A stretch of DNA of 54,631 nt from Guillardia theta CCMP2712 (taxonomy: Eukaryota; Protista; Cryptophyta), in assembly GCF_000315625.1 (NCBI RefSeq), contig NW_005434514.1, positions 70,740 through 125,370 on the forward strand. The letters run 5' to 3'. Of this stretch, positions 39,046 to 47,374 are shown one piece after another. The notes beneath the pieces were generated by a model that was given only the letters and a program-made list of their open reading frames with translations, was not told the origin of the DNA and made no database searches. The stretch's first letter is position 1; every line of letters starts with the position of its first letter. The position numbers and the translations under genes were made by a program.

Positions 39046-39961
39046 CTGATGGAACAAAAACTCTCCTGTAAACCAAGACGACTTACGTGTTTTGCGAGGC
39101 GGCATGTAGCGTGTGACAGTGTGGGACGAAGAGGGGGCTTTTCCTAGCCGTCTCAGCTTGCTAAGGTCCTCTCATGTCTGGATGCTTGGGTTTCACATCC
39201 TAGCATACAGTCTATCACTCATGTGCTCCTCAATTCTGGTTTTGTGTGCATTAAACTCGGTCTTGAGCAAAAACTGTCTTGTTACAACTAAGGTCGATGT
39301 CACGTGATATCTGCGTGACTTTGGACTAGTACAAGTCTAACAAACTTGTATTCCGTCATGGCCCGGCCGGGCTGGCCAGGCACCGCCGTTCACCCTCGGT
39401 CGACCAACACTACTTGAATGACCAGCACTATTCGGATGACCCAGCCCGGCTGCCAGTACAGGCCGGGCCGGACCCGGGCCCCGACCGTCAGTACTGTACC
39501 GACGGTGACTCGTGACCGTGACTCCAGTCCGAGGCCGGGCGGGGATGAGGGGGCCCGGGGAAAGGGAGTTAACCCCGCAGCTAGACGGACCCCCTCAGCC
39601 TCCCAGAGATTACAGGCAATACCCCTGGTGGGTACTTCGTATGGGTGGGGTACAATCAGAGGGCAAAGGAGGGGTGGGGAAGGACGGCCTTTGGTGTGAG
39701 CTGCCTTGATGGCAACCAGTAGCGCGATGGTTGTGTTGGTGCGTCCCCTCCTCCCCTCGCCGCTCCTCGCTAGTCCCTCCCTCTCCTGAGCTCTGCCGCC
39801 TGCTGACCCCCAGCCGCCGCTCTTGCCTGCGCGATGGGCACAAGGTCTCGGTAGAGGTGGTGTATCAGCTCTCGCGCGCGCAATCCGGGTGAGTCTGTAC
39901 AAGCGTCAGAGGGAGGAAGGAGATGAAGAGCGAGGGCTAGCTTCTCTTGGTCGCAGGAGAG

Positions 39962-42900
39962 ATGAAGCTCTCTGTCATCTTGCTGCATGCCGTGATCGGC
40001 TCGCTTCTTCCGTTGCATGCGTCCTCGCAGTGTGAGCGGCTGCTGGAGCAAGGCTTCGGCGGGGGAAGCTTCATCCATGGGAGCATATCATGGCGGCGGG
40101 TGTCGATGTACACGGTGGAGTTTGAGGTGATGAGCACGTGGCGGCGGAAGTTCGCGTGGCCTTGCAACCAGCAAGGCTTCAGCGGGAGGGACGGTTGGCC
40201 AGCGCCAGGGGACCGAGTGCTGACAGCAGGGCTGGGGTACAAGGAGGATCAGAGTCAAGGGGAGACGGTGGGGATCAGCTTCGAGACAGGAGACGGGGCG
40301 AGGTATCCTTTCTGGATGAGGGTGGACTCAATCTCAGTAGAGGAAGACTGGATGATGGGCACGTTTCGAATGAATCATACCTACCAAAGGGGCTATGAAT
40401 CATGCTCAAGTAACCAGTCAACTTCACCTTACATTTGCAATCCATGGACAGCGAGGCTGGCAGGGTGCTGCCGGTACAACTACTCCGGAAGCTTCGCGAT
40501 AGAGTCGCAGGTCGACCTCTCGAGCTTCAACGCCTCGTTTCGGATCGTGACCATGCCCGTCGTGTTTGCTCCGGTCGAGGCGAGCACGCGAGCGTCTACG
40601 ATATGCTTCATACCTCGGTCGGGGATGGTGTCGAGGAGCGGGGGGACCGTGGGCTATCCCCTGGACGACTACGTGTATCAGAACGCGTCCTGGTCGCTGG
40701 TGGGATCGTACGCGGGTCAGGTCGGCTTGCTGTACAACAGGTCGGCCATGGGGGAGTACTGCGTGGGACTGGAGGTGCAGCCAGGTACCGGGATGGCAGT
40801 GACGGTGATGCTGAGCGTGGGGAACCTCAACTCGACATGCGAGCTTCAGGTCAGGGCGGCGAGCGCGAGCAGCCGCTTGCCGTCCAACACGACGCTGAGG
40901 TGTTGGAGCGAGGAGTGCGCGTCGCACATGGAGGTGTTTTTCGGGTACGACTTTCCCCGGCTGTACCCCGGGGAGATCGCGAGGGCGATGGCGGACATGT
41001 ATGCAGAGAACAAGGACGGGAAGCCTCTGGAGGTGCGGTACAGGTTTGCCAGCAAGGAGCTGGCGAGCGCGGTGGTGTCGTCGGACAGCAGGGCGGTGGA
41101 GAGCGTTTACAGCTGGAACCTGTCAGAGGCTGGGCTGCACTCGAGCTTCACGCTGAACCACTTCAGCACGCCTGAGGACACGTACGTGACGGACATACAC
41201 GTGCTCTACTCGCAAGCAGTCGACCAGGCCCAGCTGCCTCTGTACGGCAGCTTGTCGTCTGCATCACCGACGCCGGGAGAGTACACTGTGAACGTGACGT
41301 CGGTGTTCACGACGTTCCCGGCGAACGTGCTGGTGCTCTCACCCGACCCGAGCAGTCAGAGCTCTCATGGCTGGTCCTTCATGTACTACAAGACGCTACT
41401 CCGCCTGACCAAGCTGAGCATGTCGACGGACGCGTACGAGCTACGAGCTATCACAGACATACGACTGGTGAACAGCAGCAAGGAGGCAGAGCCTTTGCTG
41501 CGAGAGGGCTACGTGATGCTGGGGGAGAACCTGCTGGGGCCGGGGTCAGTCGGAGAGATCTACTTGCTGTACAAGCGGGGCACGGACCCGCCAATCATCG
41601 ATGTCTCGATCAGCAACATCAGCGGATACAGCGCGGTAGGAGAGGGGAAGGGGGAGAGGAGGAGATCGAGAGGGGAGGGGAGGGGGAGGGGCACCAGAGT
41701 ACATGTATGCGAGAAGAGGGATTGGGAGGCTGGAGTTGGGGCGGGGAGTAACGCAGGATGTTGGCTGCAGGTAGAAGCTTCCTCCTATTTACCAGCAGTG
41801 GGAGCAAATTCAACGGAAACGGAATATAGAGTAGTGCTGTACTACCTGAAGAAGCCGCTGAGCTCTCTGTCGATGAGCTTCTTGTGGACGCCTTGCGAGG
41901 CTGACGTGGGAGTCTACGTGATCTGCGCTCAGCTGGTAGACTCGTTGAGCGGTAAGACGTGCGGGCGGTAGGAGGGAGGAGGCTGACATGTGGTCGTGTG
42001 TGCTGGCACGTCAGGTGGAGGCGGCAGGACCCAGTGCACGTCGGTGACGGTCGGTCGAGCTCCTGCGCCGTACACGGAGGCGCTGCCGGTACAGGTAGCG
42101 ACGATGGGAGAGGAGGTAGGAGGAGAGGGCGGGGGCGGGGGCATGGGAGCTGAGGAGATGGTGAGCAGCAACGGATCGTCTTCACGGTGGCGCGGCAGGA
42201 CCAAGGCTTTGCCGAGTACTACAGGCTGCCGTCGATCCGTCTCTCGCGCATCCTGTAAGCTCAGAGGCTGGCGGGCTAGAGCTGGGGGCAGGGAGTGACG
42301 GGGCGGACGGCAGGGGGAACGTGCCGTCGCGTGTGGGGAACCTGACCACCTTTGAGCCGCTGCATCCTGTGGTGGAGATGCGGGTCAACGGGGCGACGAC
42401 GATGACGCTGAGCAACGTGAGCGTCTTCGAGAACAAGACGCGGCTGGACGGGTCGAGGTACTCCTTCCAGGGGCTCTACAACGGGAGCATCGTGTGGACC
42501 CCGAGCCACCAGCTCAGCGGGTGGCAGGGAGCGATGTGCCTGACGACGTGCGTGTACCCGTTGACCTGTCGGGGGTGGAGCCGGGAGAGGAGGGCGGAGT
42601 GCTCGGAGTACTGCATCCCAGTGAGGGTGGAGCGGTGCAAGTGGTACGTGTCGCGGGCACAGACGTACACGGAGATAGCGGGGCTGTTCTCGACGAGCTC
42701 GCTGCTGGTACGAGACGAGAGGGGGGAAGAGGGAGGAGCTGACAGGGATGGGCAGCTCTGGTACATGAACCCAGTAAGGCAGTCCAGTCTGCATTACGAC
42801 AACTTTCAAAGCTTAACGCCAGGTTACAATTTTATGATCTACCCTGGAGAGGTAGGAGGAGGAGACGGGGGGAAGGAGGAGGGGACTGAGACAGGCTGCG

Positions 42901-43185
42901 CAGACGATCAATGTTGGTCGGAAGTATCTGTCAGAGTATGAGAATGTACAAGTGTGAAAGATGTTTCAATGTTCGACTGAAAGTCTCTCAGATTTTTGAT
43001 GTCGCACAATACTTTGGTATGAGCACCTCGGACATCTTGAGGATGAACGTCGACCTCAACTCCAGCGTTCTCAACAGCGACAAACAATTAAATCAGGTAC
43101 AGGAGTAGGCAGGTATGTTGCGATATGATCTTACGTGCTGGAACAGGATCTTTGTATAGTACCAAACGTGTGCGTGATGTTGTAA
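39962..43185 (+). CDS. Secreted multidomain protein, copy A: signal peptide, Sib-like N-terminal domain, MABP beta-prism, two LysM motifs
   Basis: Signal MKLSVILLHAVIGSLLPLHASS. Sib-like FIHGSISWRR...LAGCCR. MABP-type AITDIRLV...GYVMLGENL...IYLLYKR...PIIDV. LysM1 WYVSRAQTYTEIAGLF...LWYMNP...IYPGE|TINVG. LysM2 IFDVAQYFGMSTSDILRMNVDL...NQ|DLCIVPNVCVML*. Confidence 0.8.
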
Positions 43186-43515
43186 TGTGCGAGCAGAAGG
43201 ATCAGCGCTGACGGTCTCATGACCTTGCAGTTGGGAATCTTTTCTATGTACAGAGAAATGAAGAAAACCCTCGATCAGTGCAACTTTGTGTATATCGCAC
43301 TTGGTTTCCCTCTTGAACAATCCTAGCATCTCCATGTAAGATCGCACGCTCTGATTGTGGAAAGAATTTGGCGAGATGGTTGAATCTAGTGTAGAAACAG
43401 AAAATAAATGTAACAAGACACAGACACGAGTGTTTCAGCTAATCATTTACAAGAGCTCATTTCCTCATTCCAGCCCATGTCAAATCGTCGATCTAAACAA
43501 CTTGTACGGGGAACA

Positions 43516-46500
43516 TCATTTGAAAATGCATATGTTTGGTACTATACAAAGATCCTGTTCCAGCACGTAAGATCATATCGCAACATACCTGCCTACTCCT
43601 GTACCTGATTTAATTGTTTGTCGCTGTTGAGAACGCTGGAGTTGAGGTCGACGTTCATCCTCAAGATGTCCGAGGTGCCGATGCTGAACAGAGCAGCTAC
43701 ATGGGAAACCTGAGGTGATAGGTAAGACACAAGACAACGACCTCAAGTCGCTCATACATTCTTTCCAGTCGAATGAAACAACCTTCCAACATTGATCGTC
43801 TGCACAGCCTGTCTCAGTCCCCTCCTCCTCCCTCCCGTCCCCTCCTCCTCCCTCCCGTCTCCTCCTCCTCCTACCTCTCCAGGGTAGAACATAAAATTGT
43901 AACCTGGCGTTAAGCTTTGAAAGTTGTCGTAATGCAGACTGGACTGCCTTACTGGGTTCATGTACCAGAGCTGCCCATCCCTGTCAGCTCCTCCCTCTTC
44001 CCCCCTCTCGTCTCGTACCAGCAGCGAGCTCGTCGAGAACAGCCCCGCTATCTCCGTGTACGTCTGTGCCCGCGACACGTACCACTTGCACCGCTCCACC
44101 CTCACTGGGATGCAGTACTCCGAGCACTCCGCCCTCCTCTCCCGGCTCCACCCCCGACAGGTCAACGGGTACACGCACGTCGTCAGGCACATCGCTCCCT
44201 GCCACCCGCTGAGCTGGTGGCTCGGGGTCCACACGATGCTCCCGTTGTAGAGCCCCTGGAAGGAGTACCTCGACCCGTCCAGCCGCGTCTTGTTCTCGAA
44301 GACGCTCACGTTGCTCAGCGTCATCGTCGTCGCCCCGTTGACCCGCATCTCCACCACAGGATGCAGCGGCTCAAAGGTGGTCAGGTTCCCCACACGCGAC
44401 GGCACGTTCCCCCTGCCGTCCGCCCCGTCACTCCCTGCCCCCAGCTCTAGCCCGCCAGCCTCTGAGCTTACAGGATGCGCGAGAGACGGATCGACGGCAG
44501 CCTGTAGTACTCGGCAAAGCCTTGGTCCTGCCGCGCCACCGTGAAGACGATCCGTTGCTGCTCACCATCTCCTCAGCTCCCATGCCCCCGCCCCCGCCCT
44601 CTCCTCCTACCTCCTCTCCCATCGTCGCTACCTGTACCGGCAGCGCCTCCGTGTACGGCGCAGGAGCTCGACCGACCGTCACCGACGTGCACTGGGTCCT
44701 GCCGCCTCCACCTGACGTGCCAGCACACACGACCACATGTCAGCCTCCTCCCTCCTACCGCCCGCACGTCTTACCGCTCAACGAGTCTACCAGCTGAGCG
44801 CAGATCACGTAGACTCCCACGTCAGCCTCGCAAGGCGTCCACAAGAAGCTCATCGACAGAGAGCTCAGCGGCTTCTTCAGGTAGTACAGCACTACTCTAT
44901 ATTCCGTTTGCGTATTTGCTCCCACTGCTGGTAAATAGGAGGAAGCTTCTACCTGCGGCCAACATCCTGCGTCACTCCCCGCCCCGCTTCTGTGCCCCTC
45001 TCCTCCTCTCCCTTGGGCCCCCCGTCCCTCCCAATCCCTCTTCTCGCATACATGTACTCTGGTGCCCCTCTTCCTCCCCTCCTCTCCCCTCCTCTCCCCT
45101 CCTCTCCCCCTTCCCCTCTCCTACCGCGCTGTATCCGCTGATGTTGCTGATCGAGACATTGATGATTGGCGGGTCCGTGCCCCGCTTGTACAGCAAGTAG
45201 ATCTCTCCGACTGACCCCGGCCCCAGCAGGTTCTCCCCCAGCATCACGTAGCCCTCTCGCAGCAAAGGCTCTGCCTCCTTGCTGCTGTTCACCAGTCGTA
45301 TGTCTGTGATAGCTCGCAGCTCGTACGCGTCCGTCGACATGCTCAGCTTGGTCAGGCGGAGTAGCGTCTTGGAGTACATGAAGGACCAGCCATGAGAGCT
45401 CTGACTGCTCGGGTCGGGTGAGAGCACCAGCACGTTCGCCGGGAACGTCGTGAACACCGACGTCACGTTCACAGTGTACTCTCCCGGCGTCGGTGATGCA
45501 GACGACAAGCTGCCGTACAGAGGCAGCTGGGCCTGGTCGACTGCTTGCGAGTAGAGCACGTGTATGTCCGTCACGTACGTGTCCTCAGGCGTGCTGAAGT
45601 GGTTCAGCGTGAAGCTCGAGTGCAGCCCAGCCTCTGACAGGTTCCAGCTGTAAAAGCTCTCTACCGCCCTGCTGTCCGACGACACCACCGCGCTCGCCAG
45701 CTCCTTGCTGGCAAACCTGTACCGCACCTCCAGAGGCCTCCCGTCCTTGTTCTCTGCATACATGTCCGCCATCGCCCTCGCGATCTCCCCGGGGTACAGC
45801 CGGGGAAAGTCGTACCCGAAAAACACCTCCATGTGCGACGCGCACTCCTCGCTCCAACACCTCAGCGTCGTGTTGGACGGCAAGCGGCTGCTCGCGCTCG
45901 CCGCCCTGACCTGAAGCTCGCATGTCGAGTTGAGGTTCCCCACGCTCAGCATCACCGTCACTGCCATCCCGGTACCTGGCTGCACCTCCAGTCCCACGCA
46001 GTACTCCCCCATCGCCGACCTGTTGTACAGCAAGCCGACCTGACCTGCGTACGATCCCACCAGCGACCAGGACGCGTTCTGATACACGTAGTCGTCCAGC
46101 GGATAGCCCACGGTCCCCCCGCTCCTCGACACCATCCCCGACCGAGGTATGAAGCATATCGTAGACGCTCGCGTGCTCGCCTCGACCGGAGCAAACACGA
46201 CGGGCATGGTCACGATCCGAAACGAGGCGTTGAAGCTGGAGAGGTCGACCTGCGACTCTATCGCGAAGCTTCCGGAGTAGTTGTACCGGCAGCACCCTGC
46301 CAGCCTCGCTGTCCATGGATTGCAAATGTAAGGTGAAGTTGACTGGTTACTTGAGCATGATTCATAGCCCCTTTGGTAGGTATGATTCATTCGAAACGTG
46401 CCCATCATCCAGTCTTCCTCTACTGAGATTGAGTCCACCCTCATCCAGAAAGGATACCTCGCCCCGTCTCCTGTCTCGAAGCTGATCCCCACCGTCTCCC

Positions 46501-46798
46501 CTTGACTCTGATCCTCCTTGTACCCCAGCCCTGCTGTCAGCACTCGGTCCCCTGGCGCTGGCCAACCGTCCCTCCCGCTGAAGCCTTGCTGGTTGCAAGG
46601 CCACGCGAACTTCCGCCGCCACGTGCTTATCACCTCAAACTCCACCGTGTTCATCGACACCCGCCGCCATGATATGCTCCCATGGATGAAGCTTCCCCCG
46701 CCGAAGCCTTGCTCCAGCAGCCGCTCACACTGCGAGGACGCATGCAACGGAAGAAGCGAGCCGATCACGGCATGCAGCAAGATGACAGAGAGCTTCAT
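43516..46798 (-). CDS. Secreted Sib-like/MABP/LysM protein, copy B
   Basis: Reverse-complement paralog with intact frame and splice sites. LysM2 reads RLFHSTGKN|VSHVAALFSIGTSDILRMNVDL...NQ|DLCIVPNICIFK*. Confidence 0.8.
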
Positions 46799-47374
46799 CT
46801 CTCCTGCGACCAAGAGAAGCTAGCCCTCGCTCTTCATCTCCTTCCTCCCTCTGACGCTTGTACAGACTCACCCGGATCGCGCGCGCGAGAGCTGATACAC
46901 CACCTCTACCGAGACCTTGTGCACATCGCACAGGCAAGAGCGGCGGCTGGGGGTCAGCAGGCGGCAGAGCTCAGGAGAGGGAGGGACTAGCGAGGAGCGG
47001 CGAGGGGAGGAGGGGACGCACCAACACAACCATCGCGCTACTGGTTGCCATCAAGGCAGCTCACACCAAAGGCCGTCCTTCCCCACCCCTCCTTTGCCCT
47101 CTGATTGTACCCCACCAATACCAAGTACCCACCAGGGGTATTGCCTTTAATCTCTGGGAGGCTGAGGGGGTCCGTCTAGCTGCGGGGTTAACTCCCTTTC
47201 CCCGGGCCCCCTCATCCACCAATTTCTTTGGGTTCCGACATGGGCCGGTAGCTACGAGAACTGGTGGCTCGAGGAGGAGGGCGAGAAGGAGGAGGAGAAG
47301 GCAGACGATGAGGAGGGGAGGAGGAAGAGGAGGAGAAGGCAGGCGATGAGGAAGTGAGGAGGAAGAGAAGGAGC

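What the first reader, a model, noticed from the sequence alone, without database searches (positions are those of the whole stretch)
42918..43785. Sharply bounded ~105-bp divergent block in the second LysM motif
Block 42918-43022 encodes RKYLSEYEN|IFDVAQYFGMS, and block 43679-43785 encodes RLFHSTGKN|VSHVAALFSIG. Length in codons, intron position and hydrophobic pattern are the same, but exon and intron sequences barely align. Identity resumes abruptly on both sides, including ~145 bp downstream. The block covers the beta1-alpha1 region that contributes to the GlcNAc-binding groove in LysM domains. The pattern fits an old duplication homogenised everywhere except a specificity determinant, or a patch copied from another paralog.
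Basis: partly seen in the sequence, partly recalled or inferred. Interest (0 to 1): 0.75.

Follow-up and report, generated by a model that had tools for sequence, protein, structure and literature searches.

The report
Old divergence island in mirrored LysM genes
Two mirror-image copies of a cell-surface sugar-binding gene in the alga Guillardia theta are kept almost identical by copying from each other, except for one 105-base piece coding half of a sugar-binding surface; this is a clear but not new kind of gene evolution.

Summary
The window is Guillardia theta CCMP2712 nuclear DNA. The two blocks lie in the two arms of a 3.6-kb palindrome: 39543-43167 (+) and 43534-47217 (-), around a 366-bp unique centre. 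The arms are two convergent copies of a secreted gene that ends in a tandem LysM pair. Outside the block the arms differ at about 1% of sites, with no differences over 1020 bp on one side and 145 bp on the other. Inside the block, DNA identity equals that of shuffled sequence. Exon lengths, the phase-0 intron and 7 of 21 residues are kept, and 6 of the 7 use different codons.

A close relative, seen in two metagenome contigs, has the same palindrome, centre and both gene tails. The arms are far more alike within a genome than between genomes, so arm-to-arm gene conversion is shown. The relative's arms carry only the A-type block.

The block covers strand 1, the following loop and helix 1 of the second LysM. 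I read it as an old island that escaped conversion (0.55). Import from an unseen donor stays open (0.25); none exists in the assembly. Selection, expression and binding are untested. This is a new member of a known kind.

The parts
39543..43167 (+). Palindrome arm A. Holds the promoter region and nearly the whole of gene copy A.
   Evidence: Inverted-repeat search and full arm alignment. 99% or more identical to arm B outside the block.
43534..47217 (-). Palindrome arm B. Holds the promoter region and nearly the whole of gene copy B.
43168..43533 (.). Unique centre. Holds the last six codons and stop of each copy (diverged tails) and the 3' intergenic DNA between the convergent genes.
   Evidence: The two halves show no inverted similarity above shuffles. 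Collinear and 91.4% identical with the relative's centre.
39962..43185 (+). Gene copy A, start to stop. Signal peptide, SibA-N-like domain, Ig-like sandwiches, tandem LysM pair.
   Evidence: Start and stop translated. The C-terminal 313 aa match GenBank model P0004. Pfam results. The first-exon donor near 41635/41636 is my inference.
43516..46798 (-). Gene copy B, start to stop.
   Evidence: The first exon is open, with 6 synonymous and 6 non-synonymous differences from A. No annotated protein was found for it.
42918..43022 (+). Divergent block, A type. Spans the end of a 14-codon exon, a 46-nt intron and the first 11 codons of the next exon. The A type is typical of the family.
   Evidence: The same type occurs in the relative at 90% DNA identity. 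It keeps the nearly invariant Gly275.
43679..43785 (-). Divergent block, B type. Same layout with a 48-nt intron. The B type is atypical: Ser replaces the nearly invariant Gly.
   Evidence: Unique in the genome. Pfam LysM scores 13.1 bits for its exon against 17.7 for the A exon.
42904..42945 (+). Copy A, exon coding the end of LysM1 strand 2 and LysM2 strand 1.
   Evidence: Splice model agrees with P0004. Codon table.
42992..43096 (+). Copy A, exon coding LysM2 helix 1, helix 2 and the following loop.
   Evidence: Secondary structure from the AlphaFold2 model.
43758..43799 (-). Copy B, counterpart of the 14-codon exon.
43605..43709 (-). Copy B, counterpart of the 35-codon exon.
43023..43167 (+). 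Segment S in copy A: 145 bp with no differences from its mirror, lying between the block and the diverged tail. It includes a 50-nt intron.
   Evidence: It has 8 differences from the relative, all shared by A and B.
43534..43678 (-). Segment S in copy B, the mirror of 43023-43167.
43147..43185 (+). Last exon of copy A. Identity with B ends inside it, at 43168.
   Evidence: The family-invariant Cys is kept in both tails.
43516..43554 (-). Last exon of copy B. Same length as in A, with the stop at the same codon.
42796..42842 (+). Second sharply bounded patch, in the helix2-strand2 loop insertion of LysM1. It is the same in A and B (mirror at 43884-43930) but replaced in the relative, with a 6-nt indel.
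   Evidence: The relative's version is absent from this genome.
40390..40445 (+). Third sharply bounded patch, in the first exon. It is the same in A and B (mirror at 46315-46370) but replaced in the relative, with an 18-nt indel.
   Evidence: The relative's version is absent from this genome.
43840..43862 (-). 23-bp extra repeat unit in the GGAGG-rich intron of copy B, just upstream of the block.

Best explanation
The block is an island of old paralogous divergence inside a palindromic pair of convergent genes. The rest of the two arms is kept almost identical by repeated arm-to-arm gene conversion.

Shown:
- The palindrome, its unique centre and the two diverged gene tails predate the split from a close relative.
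- Within each genome the arms are much more alike than between genomes, so they evolve in concert.
- The two block types are homologous LysM segments that have diverged to saturation while keeping frame, intron and fold pattern.

Inferred:
- Conversion tracts have covered the long arm and the 145-bp segment S, but not the 105 bp between them.
- A stretch with no DNA homology cannot pair, so tracts stop at its edges.
- In addition, or instead, converting it may be selected against, because it codes strand 1, the strand1-helix1 loop and helix 1 of the second LysM. That is half of the sugar-binding surface, so the two copies would bind different or differently presented GlcNAc-type glycans.
- In the relative, the island was overwritten by the A type.
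For: - Palindrome anatomy: arms 99% or more identical, with no differences over 1020 bp and over 145 bp flanking the block.
- The relative's contigs L041 and L042 show the same arm, centre and both tails. The centre is collinear at 91.4% identity.
- L042 ends with 123 nt that are the exact reverse complement of its own arm.
- Site patterns outside the block: A=B but different from the relative at 159 sites; A different from B at 37 sites.
- The tails are homologous but old. Both run six codons to a stop and both keep the family-invariant Cys.
- Block DNA identity equals that of shuffles, in the intron too.
- 7 of 21 residues are kept, and 6 of the 7 use different codons, including the family-invariant Gly.
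- Neither block has another copy in the 87-Mb assembly.
- The block maps to LysM profile positions 1-19 and to E258-261 and H267-274 of a confident model.
- A divergence peak inside converting duplicates is a described pattern (PMC3924837, PMC3728101).
Against: - The relative appears to have the A type in both arms, so the B type could equally be a gain in this lineage.
- The island would have had to survive many times longer than the species split (saturated, against 8.6% neutral divergence) and then be lost quickly in the relative.
- Two other saturated patches differ between the two genomes but not between the arms. This would need several old islands resolved in opposite directions within a short time.
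- The B type is seen in one assembly only.
- The B type lacks a nearly invariant Gly, so it could be under relaxed rather than new constraint.
- No test of selection, expression or binding was possible.
Confidence: 0.55

Rival explanations
1. Recent import. One arm received a 105-bp patch by gene conversion or recombination. The donor would be a diverged source not present in the assembly: a third family member lying in a gap, or a divergent allele circulating in the population.
For: - Both contigs of the relative pass the block without a break and carry the A type, which suggests A/A there.
- The B type is unique and atypical of the family.
- The flanks are perfectly identical, as after a recent event.
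- Two further sharply bounded replaced patches, at 40390-40445 and 42796-42842, show that segment replacement recurs in this gene.
- Distant paralogues share the intron position, so any family member would fit the exon layout.
Against: - No donor was found at the DNA or peptide level in 87 Mb.
- A recent donor should be nearly identical and easy to find.
- Known paralogues are only 30-40% identical in protein, too far to supply the flanking homology that conversion needs.
- The diverged but homologous tails already prove old divergence between these two copies.
Confidence: 0.25
2. Assembly artefact. Block B, or the whole second arm, is a mis-join or a collapsed allele in the draft assembly.
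For: Block B has no independent support. No annotated protein, transcript-derived protein or metagenome contig carries it. Palindromes are hard to assemble.
Against: - The palindrome with the same centre and both tails is recovered in independent assemblies of a related organism.
- Block B keeps the reading frame, GT..AG intron ends, the exact exon lengths and a LysM-like residue pattern, and it abuts perfect identity on both sides. A chimeric or erroneous stretch would not do this.
Confidence: 0.05
3. Programmed variation. The palindrome would act as a switch, by flip-flop inversion or directed conversion, that exchanges alternative LysM cassettes to vary receptor specificity.
For: The arrangement is inverted repeats around a short centre. 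The variant cassette lies on a binding surface. Replaced patches recur in loops.
Against: - Inversion between the arms would not change either coding sequence.
- No recombinase or recognition site was seen.
- Only two cassettes exist, and there is no silent donor array.
- The centre has the same orientation relative to the tails in both genomes.
Confidence: 0.05
4. Divergence in place. The block diverged recently by local hypermutation or strong positive selection on the protein.
For: 14 of 21 codons are non-synonymous, and the block lies on a binding surface.
Against: - The intron inside the block is as diverged as shuffled sequence, and 6 of the 7 conserved residues have changed codons.
- Selection on the protein cannot do that.
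- A mutational burst would not spare the frame, splice sites and fold pattern within such sharp edges.
Confidence: 0.03

Closest known systems
Divergence peaks in duplicated genes under gene conversion: human red/green opsin exon 5, GOT1 paralogues of Tigriopus (PMC3924837; PMC3728101; Teshima and Innan 2008, as cited there)
   Same: The paralogues are homogenised by conversion except for a short stretch with high divergence at a functionally important site. There is a shoulder of raised divergence on one side.
   Different: Here the island is a physically unconverted tract that includes a saturated intron, not a few selected sites. The copies form a palindrome with a 366-bp centre. Selection is not demonstrated.
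Palindromes with arm-to-arm gene conversion, such as the primate sex-chromosome palindromes (my own knowledge, not checked in a paper here)
   Same: The inverted arms hold gene copies, arm identity is much higher than orthologue identity, and the spacer is unique.
   Different: This one is much smaller: 3.6-kb arms with a single convergent gene pair. It has an internal island, and it occurs in a cryptophyte alga.
LysM carbohydrate-binding modules (Pfam PF01476; AtlA, CERK1, Ecp6)
   Same: A beta-alpha-alpha-beta unit. In solved complexes the ligand contacts lie in the strand1-helix1 loop, the start of helix 1 and the helix2-strand2 loop (PMC4083421). This gene has a tandem pair with disulphide-type Cys residues, as in eukaryotic LysM proteins.
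   Different: This protein itself scores below the Pfam threshold. Its LysM1 carries a 10-residue loop insertion. Its ligand is unknown. The module sits at the C-terminus of a SibA-N-like, Ig-rich secreted protein family that so far has named members only in cryptophytes.

Membership tests
LysM domain (PF01476) | Score at or above the Pfam gathering threshold | tested here: not met
   P0004 scores 14.3 bits against a cut-off of 20.9 (residues 267-299, profile positions 9-40). The single exons score 17.7 bits (A) and 13.1 bits (B).
LysM domain (PF01476) | Homology to proteins that do pass as LysM | tested here: met
   37 of the 40 proteins in alignment A4 (P0004 and 39 homologues) match PF01476 at E <= 0.01, best 2.4e-18. 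The aligned tandem motif is conserved.
LysM domain (PF01476) | Beta-alpha-alpha-beta fold | tested here: met
   The AlphaFold2 model built on 40 sequences gives E258-261, H267-274, H278-284 and E302-305 with pLDDT 87-95. The Foldseek search was dominated by the Ig-like part, so it did not test the LysM part.
LysM domain (PF01476) | Binds GlcNAc-containing glycans | not testable with these tools
   Needs binding assays.
Concerted evolution of a palindromic gene pair by gene conversion | The duplication is older than the split from a related genome | tested here: met
   The relative has the same arm, unique centre and both diverged tails, collinear at 91.4% identity.
Concerted evolution of a palindromic gene pair by gene conversion | Paralogues within a genome are more alike than orthologues between genomes, at neutral sites too | tested here: met
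   159 sites have A=B but differ from the relative, against 37 sites where A differs from B. Segment S, with its intron, shows 0 differences between A and B and 8 against the relative. Caveat: the relative's arm is a collapsed metagenome consensus.
Divergence island kept by selection (neofunctionalisation under conversion) | A sharp divergence peak flanked by homogenised sequence | tested here: met
Divergence island kept by selection (neofunctionalisation under conversion) | Evidence that selection, not heterology or chance, maintains the peak | tested here: inconclusive
   Sites are saturated, so no rate ratio can be computed. There are no population data. The relative seems to have lost the island.
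SibA-like adhesins (PF24907 SIBA-E_N) | N-terminal domain at or above the Pfam threshold | tested here: inconclusive
   The first exon scores 19.6 bits against a cut-off of 28.1. 13 of the 40 A4 members match at E <= 0.01, best 1.9e-17.

The most novel reading that the evidence does not exclude
The gene may carry long-lived alternative cassettes at its glycan-recognition surfaces. Three short, sharply bounded, saturated replacements sit in a gene that is otherwise 96-100% conserved between close relatives. One is a first-exon loop, one is the helix2-strand2 loop of LysM1, and one covers strand 1 to helix 1 of LysM2. This would fit ancient variants kept by balancing or diversifying selection and shuffled between arms, alleles and strains by conversion. 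That would make it a recognition-receptor polymorphism system in a cryptophyte, comparable in logic to immune or mating recognition loci.
Probability: 0.15. Interest if true: 0.65.

Novelty: new member of a known kind. Interest (0 to 1): 0.36.

Why it matters
The locus is a compact case in which concerted evolution and escape from it can both be read directly from sequence. It is a 3.6-kb palindrome in which one 105-bp piece, coding half of a LysM binding surface, has stayed different while everything around it is homogenised.

If the two copies bind different glycans, this would be a natural experiment on which part of a LysM sets specificity. It would also give a first functional handle on an uncharacterised cryptophyte family of secreted SibA-like proteins with LysM tails.

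The work also corrects the public gene model, which covers only the last 313 residues. It does not change how gene conversion is understood.

Tried and rejected
**Donor searches in the genome**
- Both block regions were searched as 300-bp DNA, block B alone as DNA, and both 35-residue exons as protein. Only the two known places matched.
- The peptide search is insensitive. It also missed the distant chromosome-4 paralogues, which a local tblastn did find.
- The relative's two alternative patches are also absent from this genome.

**Searches for relatives elsewhere**
- Two scans of JGI metagenome contigs were blank: one with a conserved 28-mer next to the block, one with a degenerate B-type pattern.
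- Hanusia phi transcript proteins P0001 and P0006 run into introns or are frame-shifted, and gave no readable LysM2.
- The accession PRJEB17505 occurs in no paper in the library.

**Tests that gave no answer**
- The 66 nt of L042 outside the arm did not clearly match either outer flank (score z about 2.4, not collinear). The orientation of the centre relative to the outer flanks could therefore not be compared.
- The Foldseek search of the model returned only Ig-like sandwiches.
- The phmmer search against solved structures gave only weak LRR-like noise.

**Readings rejected**
- A small inversion inside one arm: the block shows no similarity in either orientation, by eye on the sequences.
- Chance: the Fisher test and the conserved frame, intron and residues rule it out.

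Copy B was handled exon by exon.
- In one script the two LysM2 exons of each copy were concatenated in memory, only to count codon differences. The count was repeated exon by exon.
Full report
**1. What the sequence is**

The best protein matches are cryptophyte proteins. One hit is the GenBank protein GUITHDRAFT_155898 of Guillardia theta CCMP2712, encoded on a 125,370-bp contig that matches the length of the window's contig. The assembly has 87 Mb in 669 contigs. The window is therefore G. theta nuclear DNA, and the gene has short GT..AG introns.

**2. Anatomy**

The two blocks are not direct repeats. They lie in the two arms of a palindrome:
- arm A, 39543-43167, plus strand;
- arm B, 43534-47217, minus strand;
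- a 366-bp unique centre between them.

Each arm holds about 420 bp of upstream DNA and almost a whole gene, so the two genes converge. Each gene codes:
- a signal peptide;
- a 558-codon first exon with a sub-threshold SibA-N-like domain;
- Ig-like sandwiches;
- a C-terminal tandem LysM pair.

The public model P0004 covers only the last 313 residues of copy A. It confirms my splice model through the block. No annotated protein was found for the first exon or for copy B.

**3. The observation**

The full arm alignment gives the following differences between the arms.

| Region (arm A coordinates) | Differences |
|---|---|
| 39543-41600 | 18 substitutions |
| 41661-41816 | indel-rich GGAGG intron |
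| 41817-42836 (1020 bp) | none |
| 42837-42917 | about five substitutions and a 23-bp indel |
| 42918-43022 (mirror 43679-43785) | the divergent block |
| 43023-43167 (145 bp) | none |
| from 43168, inside the last exon | divergence |

- In the block, DNA identity is 56%, the same as for shuffled sequence (55 +/- 3%). This holds for the intron and for both exon parts.
- The contrast with the rest of the arms has p = 6.5e-72.
- The layout is nevertheless the same in both copies: 14 codons, a phase-0 intron of 46 or 48 nt, then 35 codons.
- 7 of 21 residues are identical, and 6 of these 7 use different codons. They include the family-invariant Gly and the Arg at the very edge.

The two blocks are therefore homologous coding segments. 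They diverged to saturation while both stayed under protein-level constraint.

**4. Concerted evolution is shown, not only inferred**

A word search with the read-through ORF of copy B found an ORF protein, P0003, on an ENA metagenome contig. Its 90%-identity cluster held one more member, P0005, on a second contig (project PRJEB17505; L041, 1904 bp; L042, 4251 bp). They come from a close relative.

- L042 holds a whole arm, then the B-type tail, the centre and the reverse complement of the A-type tail. It ends with 123 nt that are the exact reverse complement of its own arm. The relative therefore has the same palindrome.
- Its centre and tails are collinear with the window's at 91.4% identity. 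I take this 8.6% as the neutral divergence between the two genomes.
- The duplication and the divergence of the tails thus predate the split.
- Outside the block, A and B share 159 differences against the relative and differ from each other at only 37 sites. In segment S, which includes an intron, the counts are 8 and 0.
- Paralogues more alike than orthologues, at neutral sites too, is the signature of gene conversion between the arms.
- The two tails are themselves homologous but old. Both run six codons to a stop and both keep the Cys that is invariant in the family. The edge of identity at 43167 is therefore a tract edge, not the duplication breakpoint.

**5. What the relative says about the block**

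Both contigs carry the A-type block, at 90% identity to block A: 51 sites where A matches the relative but not B, against 4 where B matches the relative but not A.

The contigs are MEGAHIT k127 contigs. The arms are collapsed into one path, so the join of an A block to a B tail is not evidence of linkage. However, a second, unrelated block type would have made a branch that such an assembler cannot merge, and both contigs pass the block unbroken.

L041 and L042 differ at 20 sites in their first 1149 shared bases and at none in the last 755. This looks like the two arms of one genome.

I infer, with moderate confidence, that the relative has the A type in both arms. The polarity is therefore open: either the relative lost an old island or CCMP2712 gained one.

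**6. Two further patches**

The three-way alignment shows two more short, sharply bounded, saturated replacements. Both are the same in A and B but different in the relative.
- 40390-40445 in the first exon, with an 18-nt indel.
- 42796-42842 in LysM1, with a 6-nt indel. [quoted passage not shown]

Neither version from the relative exists elsewhere in this genome. Either the ancestor's two copies differed at several islands that each lineage resolved differently, or segment replacement from unseen sources recurs in this gene.

**7. Is it LysM, and what does the block code?**

P0004 itself is below the Pfam threshold (14.3 against 20.9 bits).
- An exhaustive search found 99 representatives that share the C-terminal module. 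The only named ones are cryptophytes, Hemiselmis and Rhodomonas.
- 37 of the 40 aligned proteins (P0004 plus 39 homologues) match PF01476, best E 2.4e-18, and 13 match SIBA-E_N.
- The AlphaFold2 model on that alignment (mean pLDDT 79) gives a beta-alpha-alpha-beta unit for residues 258-305 with pLDDT 87-95.

The block, residues 257-277, covers strand 1, the strand1-helix1 loop, all of helix 1 and the first loop residues. In solved LysM complexes the ligand contacts lie in the strand1-helix1 loop, the start of helix 1 and the helix2-strand2 loop (PMC4083421).

The A type fits the family consensus and keeps the nearly invariant Gly275. The B type has Ser there and scores 4.6 bits lower.

**8. 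Donor search**

Neither block has another copy in the assembly at the DNA or peptide level. The paralogues found are only 30-40% identical in protein. They comprise four on contig 4 and others on contigs 11, 37, 119 and 202. They share the intron position in LysM2. The intron position is thus a family trait and does not discriminate between models. Two metagenome scans were blank.

**9. Reading**

- Best reading, 0.55: an old island of paralogous divergence that conversion has not overwritten in this lineage. The cause would be that a stretch without DNA homology stops tracts, or that overwriting it is selected against, or both. This is the pattern described for duplicated genes under conversion (PMC3924837; PMC3728101).
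- Import from an unassembled paralogue or a divergent allele: 0.25.
- Artefact: 0.05.
- Programmed switch: 0.05.
- Divergence in place: 0.03.
- The remaining 0.07 is left for explanations I did not think of.

Untested here: expression and splicing of copy B, read support for block B, any ligand, and selection.

**10. Limits and omissions**

Copy B was treated exon by exon, so there is no model of the B-type LysM2.
- The relative's sequence is a collapsed metagenome consensus of unknown organism.

Noticed in passing
window 39962-41635 and 45125-46798: The public gene model (GUITHDRAFT_155898, 313 aa) covers only the C-terminal part of copy A. The 558-codon first exon, with its signal peptide and SibA-N-like domain, had no self-hit in the protein database for either copy. 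Copy B seems to have no model at all.
   Followed up: partly
window 40390-40445 (mirror 46315-46370); L042 915-988: A sharply bounded patch in the first exon, replaced between this genome and the close relative, with an 18-nt length difference. It is identical in both arms here.
   Followed up: partly
window 42796-42842 (mirror 43884-43930); L041 1150-1200: A sharply bounded replaced patch in a lineage-specific loop insertion of the first LysM. The two arms here differ in it at one site only (42837, Ile in A, Phe in B). The relative has an unrelated sequence.
   Followed up: partly
G000 contig 119, L014 and L017 (about 37.3 kb and 61.2 kb): A second convergent, near-identical (about 99%) pair of LysM-tailed paralogues, about 23 kb apart. 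Identity ends just past the 3' end of the gene. No internal island is seen in the 2 kb compared.
   Followed up: partly
G000 contig 4, about 874-981 kb (L007-L010, L021-L025): A cluster of four distant paralogues (30-40% protein identity) of the same gene family within about 105 kb. Each has the tandem LysM tail and the same intron position in LysM2.
   Followed up: partly
window 43840-43862: A 23-bp extra unit in a GGAGG-rich intron puts the intron of copy B in frame. Copy B therefore reads as one 217-residue ORF across two introns, and it was this ORF that found the metagenome relative.
   Followed up: yes
P0001, P0006 (Hanusia phi transcript 767046): The two predicted proteins from one Hanusia transcript run into intron-like sequence and a shifted frame. 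The transcript appears to be unspliced or the ORF calls are wrong.
   Followed up: no
window 41817-42836 against 39543-41600: Arm identity rises towards the centre of the palindrome: no differences in the inner 1 kb, about 0.9% in the outer 2 kb. The relative's two contigs show the same gradient (20 differences, then none).
   Followed up: partly
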